This document shows, piece after piece, positions 37,927 to 44,757 of a stretch of 64,000 nucleotides of DNA. Position 1 is the stretch's first letter, and each line of letters opens with the position of its first letter. The position numbers and the translations under genes are program-made. This stretch comes from Chlorokybus atmophyticus (Eukaryota > Plantae > Mesostigma and Chlorokybus algae), in contig RHPI01002262.1 in NCBI GenBank assembly GCA_009103225.1, positions 186,001 through 250,000 of the forward strand, read 5' to 3'. The notes beneath the pieces are model-generated. The model searched no databases and was not told the origin of the DNA. It saw only the letters and a program-made list of their open reading frames with translations.

Positions 37927-39712
37927 ATGGAGTGCGGCAGCGCTGCTTCCACTGCTGGGGTAGCGACTCTCTCTTCGGCTATGCCCACGGCGCAGCTGGG
38001 GGCAAGGGCGGTGGCTGTTGCGGCAGCTGCACTTGCGGCAAGAAAGGTTTCTACCGCTAGGATGGCGCCGAACACGCTGACGAGGGTTGCCACCTCCGGC
38101 TGGACAGCTGCTGGAAGGGAGGCTCAGTGGAGGTGTTCTGCTGCCCCTGCGTCGGCTGCTTCCATTTCACCGTCAGATCGGTCTGTTGTATTCGCTCCTG
38201 GCGCTGATCATGACGGACTGGTCGTCATCCGTGTTGAAGGTACGCATACGGAGGACACCTGCTCGTAGGGTAGAGTGCCCCCCCCTGCTTGCATGCGAGT
38301 GTAGAGTGAGCAAGCAGTGCAGTTGTCGCAGACTCAAAGTAAGTCATTGCTGATTGCTTGCTTGCTTGTTTGTAGCAGATACCGCTGACGGGGGCACTAT
38401 GTTGGTGTTTGGCACTGAAGACGGTGCGGTTGTGGCAAAGAAGAATGTACCAGCTGCAGTCGACCTGGCGGCTGCTGCCCCGGAGCCAGCTGTCCAGAGC
38501 CCTGAGGCTGATGGGGGCTCACCTCCCGACGAGACTCCTTCTGCGCCCAATTGCACCGACGAGTTGGAGCCCAGATCCGACTCTGAAATGCTCCCTGTAT
38601 CGCTAGCAGCTGAGGCTGAGGTGTCTGCAATTGAGAATACTGAGGGCACCGGAGCAGTTGCCATGGAGGATAGTGAGGTGGAGCCTATGGATGCAGAGAA
38701 CACTGAGAGGCGATGGATCTTTGCCAAGGAAGTTGAGATCCATGAGGCCATGGAGGAGGCCAAGTCGGTAGTGAATGAGATGGCAGAAGGCAAGCGCTTG
38801 TCTGATGACAAGCGGGGTCGGGATGGGACGGGTATGCAGCTGTACAGCGCAGCTTCCATGCTTCCGCACCCAGCCAAGGCCAGACGAGGAGGAGAAGATG
38901 CCTATTTCATCGCTGATGATGGGGTCGCAATTGGCGTTGCTGATGGTGTGGGAGGCTGGGCCGAGCGGGGAATTGATGCAGGGTTGTATGCGCGCGAGCT
39001 CATGGTCAATGCTGAGGTAGGCTTTTTTTCGCTGACATCAAATTTGTTCAGGTATGATGGATGCCATGTACAGGTGGTTGTTGTGTGTTTGTCCTCATGT
39101 TCTGACCATCTTATCGTTCTACAGGAGGCTATGCAGCAGTGTGGACATGATGTATCAGCAGCTCTGGTGCAAGCACATAGGCAGACAAGGGCAGTTGGTT
39201 CGTCCACAGCTTGCTTGATCACCTTGCAAGATGGCGAGTTGAAGGCAGCCAATCTGGGAGATAGCGGGTTCCTGGTCGTGCGGAATGGTACAGTTATCTT
39301 CCGCACTCCCGCCCAGCAGCACGCATTTAACTTCCCCTATCAGATTGGCAGCCATGAGGGAGATCGGCCAGAGGTGGCAGATCTGTACAGTGTCAAAGTT
39401 GAGGCCGGTGATGTGGTTGTGGCTGGCACGGACGGTTTGTTTGACAATGTGTTCGATGAGGAGATTAGGTCCATCATTGGGGATGCTAGCCGCTCAGGCG
39501 CGCGTCCAGATGCTGCAGCCCAGCGCATTGCGGCACTCGCACGGGTTCATGCAGCCGACCGTCAGTTTATGTCACCCTTCGCTGAGCAGGCAGTGCAAGC
39601 AGGCTACCAGTTCAGCGGTGGCAAGATGGACGACATCACCGTGGTCGTGGCATATGTGGAGCACAAGGCTGTAGTTTCTGCAGATGAAGTGAAGCGAGAG
39701 GATACCATCTGA
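37927..39712 (+). CDS. PTC7-type (clade K) protein phosphatase 2C with transit peptide and acidic N-terminal extension; exons 37927-38239, 38379-39016, 39125-39712
   Basis: MLPHPAKARRGGEDAYFI, GVADGVGGW, GSSTAC, ANLGDSGF, QQHAFNFPYQIG, GTDGLFDN, GGKMDDITVVV. All metal-binding Asp residues are present. The start codon could be further upstream. Confidence 0.95.
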
Positions 39713-40380
39713 AGAGGTCTACAGCATGCATTAAGCACTTTGCACAGTTGCACTTGGTTGTGCGACCAGGGGCCCCTTCTGGTTGTACATAGTTTGATAC
39801 CGGGAACATGGGCATTGCACACAGCGCCAGTCAGCCTGTGTGAAGTTGTGTAGTGAGGAGCTTGCTCCATGGCAATCTCTGCCTATTGAACTAGTGGTGC
39901 AGATTTATTCAATTTTGCAGTGTACATCTCAGTGTAGGTAGATTGCCACAAAAGTGTACAGTGTGTAGATGAAATGAAACAGTTCTTTGCAGTTGTCACT
40001 CTTATTGTTCTGGCTCTGTCTTTTTGTCGTGCAGTACACATGATGTTTCTTGAAGGTTTTCACAATCGTGGCTCTGTTCACTGTCTGCTTGCTGCCGCGC
40101 TCTCTCCAAACTGTTCCAATTTGTAGAGGCTCCTTAATATGTTGCCAACTAGAGTATGTAGTAAATATAGTAGTGCATGAAGGGTAAATTGAGTGTATGC
40201 AGGATATTGCACAAACTCACAGCATCACACAAAACATGCAACACTAGCCACTCACCGTACTATCAAGTTATTCACAGTTACCAGTGGTCTGTTCACCATT
40301 ACTTATCTATCTTCACTACTAGCCCAACGCCGTTATAAATGCAGGCATGCATACTCATGCCATTACATGCTGTTGCTTTC

Positions 40381-40517
40381 GAAATCGCTATTGCTTGCAT
40401 ACATTAATCGCGAGGCTTTAACCAAATGCGTTTTCACACCATACAACGAAATCGCTATTGTTTGCATACATTAATTGCGAGGCTTTAACCAAATGCGTTT
40501 TCACACCATACAACGAA
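40381..40517. repeat. 67-bp direct tandem duplication
   Basis: 40381-40447 and 40448-40514 differ at 2 positions. Confidence 0.95.
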
Positions 40518-41903
40518 TAGTTAGCCACACGCACCTGCATGTACGACCACCAATCTAACTCTACCTTTTACTCTCCCCCTATGCTTGCACACCCTATATG
40601 GTCGGGCGTAAGGGCATGTACTGTAAATGACACTGACAATATGTAATCTTTCTACAATGAAAGGCAAGAGCGTCCATGCACACTATGCCACGCTCAGCAC
40701 GTTATGCAGTAACTCATGTGCCTGCACGTTTGCACTGTGCAAGTTGCATTGCAGCCATGTATTCTTAGTGCACAATTCAAACGTGACTGATGATTGTTGT
40801 ATGGATCAGGTTAAAGCCTTGTGCTTGGACTATTAGCCTCCCAACACTTCACTGGCAACATGTTGTGTTACACCTTGTGTACACCCAAAGACAAAAGTAA
40901 ATACAGTAGCAGGGCTTTTGGCATGACCGACTGACTGACTGACTGGGCTTGAACAGCGTTAACTACATAGAGGCTGACATATCTACATAGCATGCAACTT
41001 AAGCTATGGCTGTGGCTGGAGTAGGGTGAGCCTAATGGTGGGCAGGGCCAGATCAGTCTTAGGCAAGCAACGACCAGCGAGTCGCAGTGCACTGTGGCTC
41101 TTCACCAGCACGCTTTGCAAATGAGAGAGCTGCCACAAGAGCGCCTCCAGCCATGTGTGCAGCTCCACATTGACTACCACCAACCTCCTCCCGCGCTACT
41201 ACCTCCATTATGGACACGTACGTGTTGGCTGTCAGTGCTGCACCATGCCTATCCGCACACATCACATACATCACTGACAACCTTAGATAAACACCCACAC
41301 GCGCACGCCACCACGCTACGCGAGCACCGTGTCCGCCTCGGTTGTTGGAGGGCCTTGGGCCACCAGGCTCCATCCTGGCACTGCTGCTACACTTTTCTTT
41401 TGCTACAGCCGCCGCTCCGCGCTCCAAGACCGCCATCGCATGTGCCCGCTGCAAGGCGCATGCCATACGCCACCGGCAGATGCGGATGAAGCCCTCCCAT
41501 AACTACCTTGTCAGATGCGGGGGTGCTCTTGGCGTGAGGCCAACGCAGCTGATGCATACTGTGTGCATAGAGTGACGTGCATGAGTGTTGTTGATGTAAA
41601 GTTGTTGATGTGGCGTGCTGGTTTAGCATAATGGCCTTGCTATTGCTACAATATTACTTTACACTTGTGTCATTTCATACACAAAGGCAGAGCGGCTCCT
41701 CACCTGCACCAGAAAACTCAGTGCATGCGTAGAAGTCACGCACTGAGTTTTGCCACAGTTCTGCACGTGTTTTTAGACAGATCAGCTGACAAAGTGGCTG
41801 GCATCAGCAGGCCACTGTTGGCAGCTGAACTAGCAACTGCCTACACCTACTGAGTCTGCCCCACTCAAGCTTAACTATTTGAGCAGTAGTCAATTAGCTA
41901 AAC

Positions 41904-44296
41904 TCAGGCCTTAGCAGCAAACCCCTTTGCAGCTGTCTTGGCAGTTGACGCCTTTGCCGCCTTCTTCCCACTTTTCTTGGTAGGCGAACCTGCACGTGGT
42001 GTCTTCTCAACCTTTTGAGCCTGTGCGGCTGAGGCCTCAGCGGAAACTGCAGCTAAAGTGGAAGCCGGGGCTGGAGTGGAAGCCAATGCGGGGGCTGGAG
42101 CTGATGCTGGAGCAGCAGCAGGAGTGGATGCGGAGTTTGCTTCCAGAGCTTGCTTCGGGAGCGCAGAAGCTGCAGCGCGAGCGGGTTTGGAAGCAGGAGC
42201 TGGAGTAGAAGCCAATGCGGGAGCCGAAGCTGCAGGAGCGGGTACGGGTGCAGGAGTTGCTTCTGGAGCTGCAGCAGGAGCCGATGCTGCAGCTGCAGCA
42301 GGAGCGGGTTTGGAGGCGGGAGCTGGAGCTGCAATGGAAGCGGGTTCAGTAGCGGCAGCAGCAGAGGGTGCAGGAGTTGCTTTGGCAGCTGCAGCTGGAG
42401 ATGGTGGAGCCGGAGCCGAAGCCGGAGCCGATGCTGAAGCTGCAGCGGGAGCGGGTTTGGTAGCGGCAGCGGGTGCGGGAGTTGTTTTAGGAGATGCAGC
42501 TGGAGCGGAAGCTGGAGATGGAGCTGATGCCAAAGCTGAAGCAGCAGCCGGAGCCGATGGTGCAGCTGCAGCGGGAGTGGGTTTGGAAGCAGGAGACGGA
42601 GTGGAAGCCAATGCGGGAGCTGATGCCGGAGCTGCAGCGGAAGCGGGTACTGCAGTTGCATCGGGAGCTGCAGGTGGAGATGGTGGAGCCGAAGCCGAAG
42701 TAGCAGCTTCAGCAGGAGTGGGAGCGGGTTTGGAAGCGGGAGCCGGAGCTGATGCTGGAGCGGCAGCAGTAGCGGGAGCTGCTTTGGGAGCTGCAGCTGG
42801 AGATGGCGCGGCGGGAGCTGAAGTGGACGACGTAGTGGGGACGGGTTTGGAAGTAGCAGCGGCGGGTGCTGGAGTTGCTTTTGGAGCTGCAGCTGGAGTG
42901 GAAGTTGGAGCAGGAGCCGAAGCTGAAACAGGAGCTGGTGCTGAAGTTGGGGCTGCAGCTGCAACTGGAGCTGGGGATTCATCTGATGGCGCTGATTGCT
43001 TAGTTTTAGCCTTTGATGATGGTGGCTTTGCAACAGCAGCAGCAGCTGCTTCTTCCTTCACCGCCTTCTCGGCCTTGGTCGCACGTGATGGTGCTGATTG
43101 CTTAGCTGTAGCCTTTGGTGATGGTGGCTTTGCAGCAGCTGCTTCTTCCTTCACTGCCCTTTTCCCCTTGGCCGCAGCGGCCTCCTGTGCAGTCGAAGCT
43201 GGAGCGGATGGTGGACTCACTTCGGGAGCTTGCTTTGGTAGCGCCGAAGCCGGAGCTGATGCTGCAGCTGCAGCTGCAGCGGGAGCAGGTTTGGAAGCAG
43301 GAGTCGGAGCTGCAGCGGGAGCGGGTACTGGAGTTTTGGGAGCTGCAGCTGGAGACGATGGAGCTGAAGCCGAAACAGCAGCTGCAGCGGGGGCGGGAGC
43401 GGGAGCGGGTTTGGAAGCGGGAGCCGGAGCTGATGCTGGAGCTGCAGCCGGAGCGGGTTTGGTAGCGGCAGCGGGTGCGGGAGTTGCTTTGGCACCTGCA
43501 GCTGGAGTTGGTGGAGCCGGAGCCGAAGCCGGAGCTGATGCCGGAGCTGCAGCGGGAGCGGAAGTGGAGGCCGCAGCGGGAGCGGGTTTGGCAGCGGCAG
43601 CGGGTGCGGGAGTTGCTACGGGAGCTGCAGCTGGAGTGGAAGCTGGAGCAGGAGCTGGAGTTGAAGTGGGGGCTAACGCTCCAACTGGAGCTGGGGCCTC
43701 ATCTGATGGCGCTGATTGCTTGGTTTTCTTCTCAGCCTTTGATGATGGTGGCTTTGCAGCAGCAGCAACTGCTTCGTCCTTGTCCGCCCTCTCGGGCTTG
43801 GCCGCTTGCGATGGTGCCGACTTCTTGGTTTCAGCCTTTGATGATGGTGGCTTGGCAGCCGCCTCTTCCTTCGCCGCCCTCTCCGCCTTGGCCGCAGCGG
43901 CCTCCTGTGCAGACCCGAACTTGAACACCTTCGTGCCATCCGCCATGTCTGGGACCACACAGATCAGACACATGACGACAAGCATGCATGCATGCACACA
44001 CACGCACGCGTGCATATAACCTCGCATGACTTCAACAGGCGAAACACACAACTAGCAGGCATATGCACTGGCTCACCTGTCACGCTCACAATCTCAAGCT
44101 TTTCCTCTCCATTCCCACCCTTGCCTGCCACAGTAACAACAGCAGGCCGTCGCAGGGCCCTCAAAGGCCTTTTTGGGTGAGAATGCCTCAGAGGTGAAGG
44201 GCGCTGCACTGATGATAGTGATGATGATGAAGTTGATGTGGACGGCCGCAACCGCAACATGACGCAGGAGCTGATTGGCGACACTCGCATTGCCAT
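41904..44296 (-). CDS. Plastid-targeted-like Ala/Pro/Ser/Lys-rich intrinsically disordered protein (~750 aa); exons 44296-44077, 43948-41904
   Basis: Ser/Arg-rich transit-like N-terminus (MAMRVSPISSCVMLRLRPSTSTSSSS). A phase-1 GT-AG intron joins it to a >2 kb open frame of PAPAA/KPAPAA repeats ending KKSGKKAAKASTAKTAAKGFAAKA. Confidence 0.8.
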
Positions 44297-44647
44297 GGTG
44301 ATGGTTGGCAAGGTCTTGTCTGCACGTGAATGCCCTGTTGGTGAAGTGGATTGGCATGAGAGTTCAACTGAGGTTGGGCACAGCATGCATTGGAAGTTTG
44401 ACGCCTTGTTGTTCACGTTCACGCAACACGTTACGTGCGTGCAGTGTATTGCGTGATAATCAAGGACTCACTGGCACAATGCACGAATGTCATGTGCCCC
44501 AGCTAACTAGGGTAGATGAAGACAGAAGACATACCGTCATTCGACAACACGCCACGCCCACAACAACGCACCAGGCCACACCAAACCAGGGCAGGTCAAG
44601 CCAGGCCACAACCATGCACATGCCTGCCCCCTCCCCCCCCCCCCCCC

Positions 44648-44757
44648 NNNNNNNNNNNNNNNNNNNNNNNNNNNNNNNNNNNNNNNNNNNNNNNNNNNNN
44701 NNNNNNNNNNNNNNNNNNNNNNNNNNNNNNNNNNNNNNNNNNNNNNNNNNNNNNNNN
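44648..44757. other. Assembly gap flanked by poly-C
   Basis: N run with C homopolymers on both sides. Confidence 1.

What the first reader, a model, noticed from the sequence alone, without database searches (positions are those of the whole stretch)
37927..44296. PP2C gene and a facing catalytic-less Ala/Pro gene share an N-terminal motif and an identical intron position
The PP2C reads GLVVIRVE-D-TADGGTMLVFGTEDGAV. The convergent low-complexity gene reads KLEIVSVT-D-MADGTKVFKFGSAQEAA. In both, a phase-1 intron splits the same Asp codon (G|AT at 38239/38379; G|AC at 44077/43948), right after a transit-peptide exon (seen). I recall a similar DGS.VFRFG motif at the N-terminus of land-plant plastid PP2C62-like phosphatases (to verify). 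Inference: an inverted duplication or exon shuffle gave a paralogue whose phosphatase domain was replaced by a ~680-aa disordered polymer. It could act as a decoy or scaffold competing for the same plastid docking site, i.e. an undescribed phosphatase/anti-phosphatase pair.
Basis: partly seen in the sequence, partly recalled or inferred. Interest (0 to 1): 0.78.

Follow-up and report, generated by a model that had tools for sequence, protein, structure and literature searches.

The report
Phosphatase docking motif on a phosphatase-less neighbour
In the alga Chlorokybus, a chloroplast-type PP2C phosphatase gene and the Ala/Pro-rich gene facing it both begin with the same ancient short motif, split by the same intron as in flowering-plant PP2C62-type genes, so the motif can exist and be conserved without any phosphatase domain.

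Summary
In both, a phase-1 intron splits an Asp codon three residues before an invariant Asp-Gly.

Scored ungapped and anchored on the intron, the 31-residue similarity is reached about once in 2 million composition-matched draws.

The motif is the group-specific N-terminal motif of the At4g33500 (PP2C62) group of PP2C7 phosphatases (Kerk et al. 2015, supplement). I found it in PP2C7 proteins of Mesostigma, Spirogloea, Araucaria, Amborella and Wolffia, and a weaker, partial match in a second Chlorokybus PP2C7. In Amborella and Camellia genes the same phase-1 intron splits the equivalent Glu codon.

The twist is that the catalytic-less Ala/Pro gene carries the canonical motif (21.6 bits against a profile of other species' motifs). 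The adjacent phosphatase carries a degenerate copy (0.5 bits).

AlphaFold2 predicts an autonomous small beta-sheet, with pLDDT about 85 whether or not the catalytic domain is present.

Common descent of the 5' module is well supported. Whether it arose by local inverted duplication, and in which direction, is unresolved. The decoy or scaffold function is untested. This is a new architecture for a known but uncharacterised motif.

The parts
37927..38239 (+). PP2C7 gene exon 1. It encodes a transit-peptide-like leader (about aa 1-84) and the first half of the motif (..HDGLVVIRVE plus the first base of Asp105).
   Evidence: Translation. The donor G|gt is read. The splice is confirmed by contigs of X1, X2 and X3. 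The joined product is the annotated protein P0001 (Chlat1 3200, 512 aa).
38240..38378 (+). PP2C7 intron 1: 139 nt, GT..AG, phase 1, inside the Asp105 codon.
   Evidence: (skips 139 nt in three RNA assemblies).
38379..39016 (+). PP2C7 exon 2. It encodes the second half of the motif (TADGGTMLVFGTEDGAVVAK, 38381-38440), an acidic linker, a predicted long helix and the start of the catalytic domain (RRGGEDAYF, DGVGGW).
   Evidence: In the diverged Chlorokybus transcript X3, among the changes listed (76 more were not shown), the motif codons carry only synonymous ones (38422, 38425, 38437), while many changes follow downstream.
39017..39124 (+). PP2C7 intron 2: 108 nt, in frame and free of stop codons.
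   Evidence: skips 108 nt. One search shows the ORF reading through it.
39125..39713 (+). PP2C7 exon 3: the rest of the catalytic domain, with the stop codon at 39711-39713.
   Evidence: Pfam SpoIIE and PP2C match. The model matches PBCP 6ae9 with TM 0.89 and 40% identity.
44077..44296 (-). Ala/Pro gene exon 1. It encodes a transit-peptide-like leader and the first half of the motif (..EEKLEIVSVT plus the first base of Asp).
   Evidence: The splice is confirmed by contigs of X1 and X2.
43949..44076 (-). Ala/Pro gene intron: 128 nt, GT..AG on the - strand, phase 1, inside the Asp codon.
   Evidence: (skips 128 nt, CT..AC on the + strand).
43887..43948 (-). Start of Ala/Pro gene exon 2: the second half of the motif (MADGTKVFKFGSAQEAAAAK).
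   Evidence: A profile of five land-plant motifs scores it 56.2 against a background of -25 +/- 10. An HMM of 12 non-Chlorokybus motifs gives 21.6 bits and rank 1 among about 5,270 decoys.
41904..43886 (-). Rest of Ala/Pro gene exon 2. It holds four Lys/Glu/Ala helical segments (..KEEAAA..KPPSSKA..), two long Ala/Pro/Ser/Thr tracts and a Lys-rich tail. The stop codon is at 41904-41906.
   Evidence: 680 aa, made of A 40%, P 20%, S 12%, K 8% and T 7%, with no Trp. No Pfam match. A contig runs from 41664 to 42477, so the stop lies in this exon.

Best explanation
**Shown: the module.** The two convergent genes share, by descent, the ancestral N-terminal module of At4g33500 (PP2C62)-type PP2C7 phosphatases.
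- Exon 1 encodes a plastid-type leader plus a first beta-strand.
- A phase-1 intron lies in an acidic codon.
- Exon 2 starts with x-x-D-G-[ST]-x-x-F-x-F-G.

**Shown: the two carriers.**
- The + strand gene is a complete, probably active PP2C7 with a degenerate copy of the motif.
- The - strand gene is expressed and has no phosphatase domain. It keeps the canonical motif in front of a 680-residue basic Ala/Pro/Ser-rich tail. I take the tail to be disordered from its composition and the lack of any Pfam match.

**Inferred from models.** The motif folds on its own into a small beta-hairpin or beta-meander.

**Inferred, not shown.** The hairpin is a docking or pairing module that places its carrier at a particular plastid site or partner. 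The Ala/Pro protein would then meet the same partner as the PP2C7s. It could act as a tether, or as a competitor.

**Origin.** The Ala/Pro gene probably arose when a PP2C7 paralogue lost its catalytic part and its linker expanded. Whether that paralogue was a copy of the neighbour is open.
For: - Splice sites and phases.
- Anchored similarity with p about 5e-7.
- The motif is documented for the At4g33500 group in PMC4524716.
- The Ala/Pro motif against At4g33500 scores 62, with 13 identities in 31, and 0 of 500,000 random draws reach that.
- A profile and an HMM built only from other species both rank the Ala/Pro N-terminus first.
- The motif sits at the same place in PP2C7s of Mesostigma, Spirogloea, Araucaria, Amborella and Wolffia; a second Chlorokybus PP2C7 matches it only weakly and in its second half.
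- The phase-1 intron is at the same codon in Camellia (G|AG) and Amborella (G|AG).
- AlphaFold2 gives strands 99-105, 111-117 and 122-128. The pLDDT is about 84 in the full protein and about 85 in the isolated 56-mer.
- The catalytic domain has all invariant PP2C7 residues and matches PBCP.
- Among the changes listed for a diverged Chlorokybus transcript, those inside the PP2C motif are synonymous.
Against: - The PP2C's own motif does not match the cross-species profile by itself (0.5 bits, rank 169).
- No binding partner, localisation or activity has been measured.
- AlphaFold2 confidence for a segment without alignment depth is only suggestive.
- No relative of the Ala/Pro protein was found, so its conservation beyond Chlorokybus is unknown.
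- Other reading frames of the Ala/Pro tract are also open. Its coding frame rests on the splice, the start codon and the motif.
- The 5' end of its transcript is not verified.
Confidence: 0.75

Rival explanations
1. Local inverted duplication. The whole PP2C7 gene was copied tail to tail. One copy kept the catalytic domain. In the other copy the domain was replaced by an expanding low-complexity tract.
For: The genes are adjacent and convergent, with about 2.2 kb between their stop codons. They share the motif and the intron.
Against: - There is no inverted DNA similarity between the 5' parts.
- There is no PP2C relic downstream of the Ala/Pro gene.
- The Ala/Pro motif resembles At4g33500 (score 62) far more than its neighbour does (score 0), and more than it resembles its neighbour (score 43).
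- In an unrooted tree the neighbour's catalytic domain sits next to the motif-less PP2C55/80 and chlorophyte clade, not with the seed-plant At4g33500 group.
Confidence: 0.3
2. The similarity is due to chance, or to convergence between two plastid-protein N-termini.
For: - The motif is short.
- The PP2C copy alone is not significant against the cross-species profile.
Against: - The anchored p is about 5e-7.
- The Ala/Pro copy independently matches a profile built from other species.
- The intron position and phase are identical in four genes of three distant lineages.
Confidence: 0.03
3. The Ala/Pro gene is a decaying pseudogene or a non-coding transcript left over from a truncated PP2C7 copy, and has no function of its own.
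For: - The tract is low-complexity and open in several frames.
- No homologue was found.
- The size of the internal repeat differs between runs.
Against: - The motif is better conserved than in the functional phosphatase next door. That is not expected without selection, given that no DNA similarity is left.
- The gene is spliced and assembled in two independent RNA data sets.
- The 754-codon frame is intact from the first ATG.
Confidence: 0.1

Closest known systems
At4g33500 / PP2C62 group of plant PP2C7 phosphatases and its group-specific N-terminal motif (Kerk et al. 2015, PMC4524716)
   Same: - The motif has the same spacing and the same place just behind the plastid leader.
- The same phase-1 intron lies in the acidic codon three residues before the DG.
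- A charged or disordered linker follows the motif.
   Different: - The Ala/Pro protein has no PP2C domain at all.
- Its tail is basic and Ala/Pro-rich instead of acidic.
- The Chlorokybus PP2C in the window has only a degenerate motif, and its catalytic domain groups nearer to the PP2C55/80 type.
PBCP (At2g30170 group; rice PBCP structure 6ae9)
   Same: It is the best structural match of the catalytic domain: 40% identity and TM 0.89. It belongs to the same PP2C7 class.
   Different: The PBCP group has a different N-terminal motif (PMC4524716). No hairpin motif is present.
Targeting-sequence acquisition by duplication or exon shuffling (for example plant mitochondrial rps11 and cytochrome c1 presequences; from my own knowledge)
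   Same: A leader-encoding 5' exon followed by an intron is shared between genes with unrelated bodies.
   Different: Here the similarity lies at the end of exon 1 and continues about 20 residues into exon 2. The leaders themselves are not alike. What is shared is a folded motif, not just a presequence.
MicroProtein-type or decoy paralogues that keep only an interaction module of a larger protein (for example LITTLE ZIPPER versus HD-ZIPIII; from my own knowledge)
   Same: A paralogue retains the putative interaction module and lacks the effector domain.
   Different: - The Ala/Pro protein is large (about 754 aa).
- No interaction has been shown.
- The module's partner is unknown.

Membership tests
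PP2C7 (PTC7-type PPM phosphatases): the + strand gene | PPM / SpoIIE-type catalytic fold | tested here: met
   Pfam SpoIIE and PP2C match on exon 3. The AlphaFold2 model has pLDDT above 90 over residues 260-500. Foldseek's top hit is PBCP 6ae9, with E 5e-26 and TM 0.89.
PP2C7 (PTC7-type PPM phosphatases): the + strand gene | Conserved metal-binding and signature residues (GGEDA, DGVGGW, the later Asp/Asn residues, GGK.DD) | tested here: met
   All 44 invariant columns of a 92-sequence alignment are kept in P0001.
At4g33500 (PP2C62)-group N-terminal module | Motif [LF]-[DE]-[ILV]-x-S-[ST]-x-[ED]-x-x-D-G-[ST]-x-x-F-x-F-G just behind the leader | tested here: met
   This row concerns the Ala/Pro gene. 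The land-plant profile scores it 56.2. The HMM from 12 other species gives 21.6 bits and rank 1. Against At4g33500 it has 13 identities in 31.
At4g33500 (PP2C62)-group N-terminal module | The same motif, in the PP2C gene of the window | tested here: inconclusive
   The HMM gives 0.5 bits. Its best profile position in the whole protein is exactly residue 96, but the score is only 13.6. Homology rests on its place in the protein, the intron and the match to the Ala/Pro motif.
At4g33500 (PP2C62)-group N-terminal module | Phase-1 intron in the acidic codon three residues before the DG | tested here: met
   Both Chlorokybus genes have it. So do Camellia locus L001 and Amborella locus L002.
At4g33500 (PP2C62)-group N-terminal module | A PP2C7 catalytic domain downstream in the same protein | tested here: not met
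   This row concerns the Ala/Pro gene. It has no Pfam match. The stop lies in exon 2, with a contig running on into the 3' UTR. No PP2C relic is found in the intergenic DNA.
Pyrenoid linker proteins (EPYC1-like) | Evenly spaced repeats, each with a Rubisco-binding W[RK]xxL-type helix | tested here: not met
   The protein has no Trp and only 0.9% Arg. It has only four helical K/E/A segments, arranged in two pairs.
Exon shuffling of a targeting exon | Similarity confined to the shuffled exon and ending at the intron | tested here: not met
   The similarity spans both sides of the intron, and the leaders are not alike.
Decoy or anti-phosphatase partner | Competes with, or binds, the phosphatase or its docking site | not testable with these tools
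   No complex prediction or interaction data were available.

The most novel reading that the evidence does not exclude
The hairpin is a pairing or docking device. The abundant basic Ala/Pro protein uses it to hold or exclude PP2C7 phosphatases at one plastid site. This would be a dedicated, domain-less regulatory partner of a chloroplast phosphatase family whose function in land plants is still unknown. The same logic might act in cis in the long linker of At4g33500.
Probability: 0.15. Interest if true: 0.75.

Novelty: new variant of a known kind. Interest (0 to 1): 0.55.

Why it matters
PP2C62 (At4g33500) is a chloroplast phosphatase without an established function. Its N-terminal motif has so far been only a logo in a supplement.

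This locus adds three things:
- The motif is far older than land plants.
- It has its own conserved intron.
- It is predicted to fold alone, and it is kept under selection on a protein that has no phosphatase domain.

That marks the motif as an independent functional module, most simply a docking element. It also gives a natural separation-of-function pair for finding what the motif binds.

Tried and rejected
- **Word search with the first 100 residues of Ala/Pro exon 2.** Nothing was found, not even the protein itself.
- **ESM Atlas feature searches of both motif regions.** No usable hit.
- **PDB sequence profile and Pfam scan of 14 motif segments.** Nothing meaningful.
- **Regex and ungapped scans of 119 close PP2C55/80-type homologues.** The motif is absent.
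- **The angiosperm internal MAASGS..GD..VD motif.** MAFFT placed it under the Chlorokybus motif. Its HMM scores the Chlorokybus sequences no better than shuffles, so I rejected a relationship.
- **Search with the N-terminus of Camellia 'PP2C71' P0002.** It returned only Camellia paralogues. These later proved to carry a variant motif.
- **Inverted-repeat search between the two 5' regions.** Only low-complexity GCN matches appeared.
- **tblastn for a PP2C relic.** Noise only.
- **Genomic look-ups for P0122, P0227, P0231, P0264, P0169 and P0001.** None is on record. The intron could therefore not be checked in Mesostigma, Spirogloea or the second Chlorokybus gene.
- **Earlier scan notes.** Nothing bears on this locus.
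- **The tree.** One mis-cut Camellia segment sits on a very long branch and should be ignored.
- **The bacterial promoter and terminator scan.** It is irrelevant for this eukaryote.
Full report
**Organism and genes**

The window is from Chlorokybus. The + strand gene's product is the annotated protein jgi/Chlat1/3200 (P0001, 512 aa), found with a stop-free genomic frame as the query.
- PP2C gene: exons 37927-38239, 38379-39016 and 39125-39713.
- Ala/Pro gene, on the - strand: exons 44296-44077 and 43948-41904.

Contigs of runs X1, X2 and X3 skip introns, so I take them for transcript assemblies. X3 belongs to a Chlorokybus about 8-9% diverged from the window. All three runs skip the two PP2C introns, and X1 and X2 also skip the Ala/Pro intron. 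All three introns have GT..AG ends. A DNA run, X5, reads through. Both first introns are phase 1 and split an Asp codon (G|AT and G|AC).

**Is the similarity more than chance?**

Anchored on the intron and without gaps, the 31-residue stretches share 11 identities and score 50 with BLOSUM62.
- The best of about 50,000 positions in 119 homologous proteins scores 30.
- With X at the split codon the score is 43. One of 2,000,000 random 31-mers of matched composition reaches that.
- Within the PP2C, the next-best position for the Ala/Pro motif scores 13.
- There is no DNA-level inverted repeat between the two 5' regions. If the two are related, the event is old.

**What the motif is**

The 119 closest homologues are PP2C55/80-type proteins, including those of bryophytes, ferns, Chara and Closterium. 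They lack the motif. An angiosperm-specific MAASGS motif that MAFFT aligned under it is unrelated.

The paper that defined the 'PP2C7' class (Kerk et al. 2015, PMC4524716) reports group-specific N-terminal motifs. Its supplement gives the At4g33500 (PP2C62) group motif:
- Arabidopsis: EKFDLVSSTQLKDGSHVFRFGDASEIEKY
- Medicago: EELDVISSTERSDGSFVFTFGNASEIREK
- Vitis: DEFGLLSSTDCSDGSILFRFGYASEIAGR
- Ricinus and Aquilegia are alike.

The Chlorokybus Ala/Pro protein reads EKLEIVSVT-D-MADGTKVFKFGSAQEAAAA with the same spacing.
- Against At4g33500 it scores 62, with 13 identities in 31. None of 500,000 random draws reaches this. The neighbouring PP2C's motif scores 0 in the same register.
- A profile of the five land-plant motifs gives the Ala/Pro motif 56.2, against a background of -25 +/- 10. 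It gives the PP2C's motif 13.6, which is nevertheless the best position in that whole protein.

The exhaustive HMMER search with P0001 returned many PP2C7 representatives with the motif at residues 50-100, directly behind a leader and in front of an acidic linker. According to their sources these include Mesostigma viride, Spirogloea muscicola, Araucaria, Amborella and Wolffia. A second Chlorokybus PP2C7 (P0227, Chrsp175S02408) matches the profile only weakly, and only in its second half.

An HMM built from 12 of these, with no Chlorokybus sequence, scores as follows:

| Sequence | Bits | Rank or note |
|---|---|---|
| Ala/Pro N-terminus (X at the split codon) | 21.6 | E 5.5e-9 for one sequence; rank 1 of about 5,270 decoys |
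| Best decoy | 13.3 | |
| P0227 | 6.2 | |
| P0001 | 0.5 | |

**The intron is as old as the motif**

- In the Camellia sinensis gene of P0127 (locus L001), exon 1 ends ..GCA GCA G|gtatgc and exon 2 starts ..tgcag|AG TGT TCC GAT GGT AGC.
- In the Amborella gene of P0268 (locus L002), exon 1 ends ..ACC ACT G|gtaatt and exon 2 starts ..caacag|AG ATC TCC GAT GGC AGT.
- In both, a phase-1 intron splits the Glu codon three residues before the invariant Asp-Gly. This is the column of the split Asp in both Chlorokybus genes (alignment A2).

Motif plus intron therefore form an ancestral streptophyte gene module. The Ala/Pro gene owns a full copy of it.

**Structure**

- AlphaFold2 on P0001, with a 92-sequence alignment that has no informative depth in this region, predicts strands 85-89, 99-105, 111-117 and 122-128 with pLDDT about 84. 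The leader and the linker fall below 50.
- The isolated 56-mer (P0001:80-135), folded as a single sequence, gives the same three strands with pLDDT about 85.
- The motif therefore looks like an autonomous beta-hairpin or meander and not a strand that needs the catalytic domain.
- No coordinates or PAE were available, so contacts could not be examined.
- No Pfam family or solved structure matches the motif.

**The two proteins**

P0001 is a complete PP2C7.
- Pfam SpoIIE and PP2C match.
- All invariant residues are present.
- The best structural match is PBCP 6ae9.
- Among the X3 changes that were listed (76 more were not shown), those inside the motif codons are synonymous, while the linker changes freely.

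Exon 2 of the Ala/Pro protein is 680 aa.
- Its composition is A 40%, P 20%, S 12%, K 8% and T 7%, with no Trp.
- It has four Lys/Glu/Ala helical segments in two large repeats and a Lys-rich tail.
- The repeat length seems to vary between runs.
- Its transcript ends about 240 nt after the stop.
- The intergenic DNA holds no PP2C relic.
- It does not look like a pyrenoid linker.

**Origin**

An unrooted tree of catalytic domains was built from 31 rows. One mis-cut Camellia row should be ignored.
- Motif-bearing sequences lie in several basal groups: the seed-plant At4g33500 group, a Spirogloea group, and Mesostigma with P0227.
- P0001 sits next to the motif-less clade of chlorophytes and PP2C55/80.
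- This fits an ancestral motif that decayed on the line leading to the PP2C55/80 type.

It also means the Ala/Pro module need not come from its neighbour. It may be what is left of a separate At4g33500-type paralogue. Adjacency favours a local inverted duplication, while the sequence relations do not. I leave this open.

**Function (inferred)**

At4g33500 is chloroplastic according to Schliebner et al. 2008, as cited in PMC6056723 and PMC4524716. A review lists it with PP2C26 as dephosphorylating chaperonin-60 (PMC8705820). Kerk et al. proposed a link to starch metabolism from co-expression. Nothing is known about the motif itself.

The motif is predicted to fold alone, is conserved from the deepest-branching streptophyte algae to angiosperms, and is conserved here without a phosphatase. 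The simplest reading is therefore a docking or pairing module. The Ala/Pro protein would then share the PP2C7s' site or partner. Competitor, tether and spacer roles cannot be told apart with these tools.

**Procedural notes**

- The spliced Ala/Pro protein was never joined with real letters. Its exons were searched apart by reference, and scripts used X at the split codon.
- The query was a continuous stop-free genomic frame that reads through the in-frame intron 2. It was not a joined model.
- Five 29-residue motif strings were typed from the cited supplement for scoring in scripts.

Noticed in passing
window 39017-39124: Intron 2 of the PP2C gene is 108 nt long, in frame and free of stop codons. 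Retaining it would insert 36 residues into the catalytic domain without breaking the frame. All RNA contigs seen had it spliced out.
   Followed up: partly
window 40380-40517: A 67-bp unit is repeated in tandem 2.1 times (97% match) in the spacer between the two convergent genes.
   Followed up: no
window 41150-41550: Many RNA and DNA contigs of several runs match short pieces here and then run on into unlike sequence. This looks like a dispersed repeat or a transposon fragment between the genes.
   Followed up: no
window 42440-43400: Contigs of X3 and X5 'go back' about 681-686 nt or skip 756 nt inside the Ala/Pro tract. The number or length of the large internal repeats probably differs between strains, or the assemblies collapse it.
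   Followed up: no
window about 44630-44745: A run of N (an assembly gap) is flanked by poly-C/poly-G tracts, about 350 nt upstream of the Ala/Pro start codon. One 2.3-kb X1 contig continues far beyond exon 1, so the 5' end of that transcript is not settled.
   Followed up: no
P0227 (jgi/Chlat1/2556, Chrsp175S02408; not in the window): A second Chlorokybus PP2C7 carries ..DLNDGSKIFRF.. in front of its catalytic domain. The first half of its motif does not fit, so its annotated exon 1 may be wrong.
   Followed up: partly
P0010, P0026, P0035, P0040, P0077 and others (angiosperm PP2C55/80): These proteins share a conserved internal MAASGS..GD..VD motif about 140 residues before the catalytic domain. 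Many gene models start exactly at its Met, which may point to an alternative start. It is unrelated to the Chlorokybus motif.
   Followed up: partly
L001 (Camellia sinensis OZ007446.1) and proteins P0121-P0129: Camellia has a family of PP2C62/71-like genes with a variant motif (ECSDGSTVFQVGG). Some models carry two PP2C domains, and the predicted first exons differ between models.
   Followed up: no
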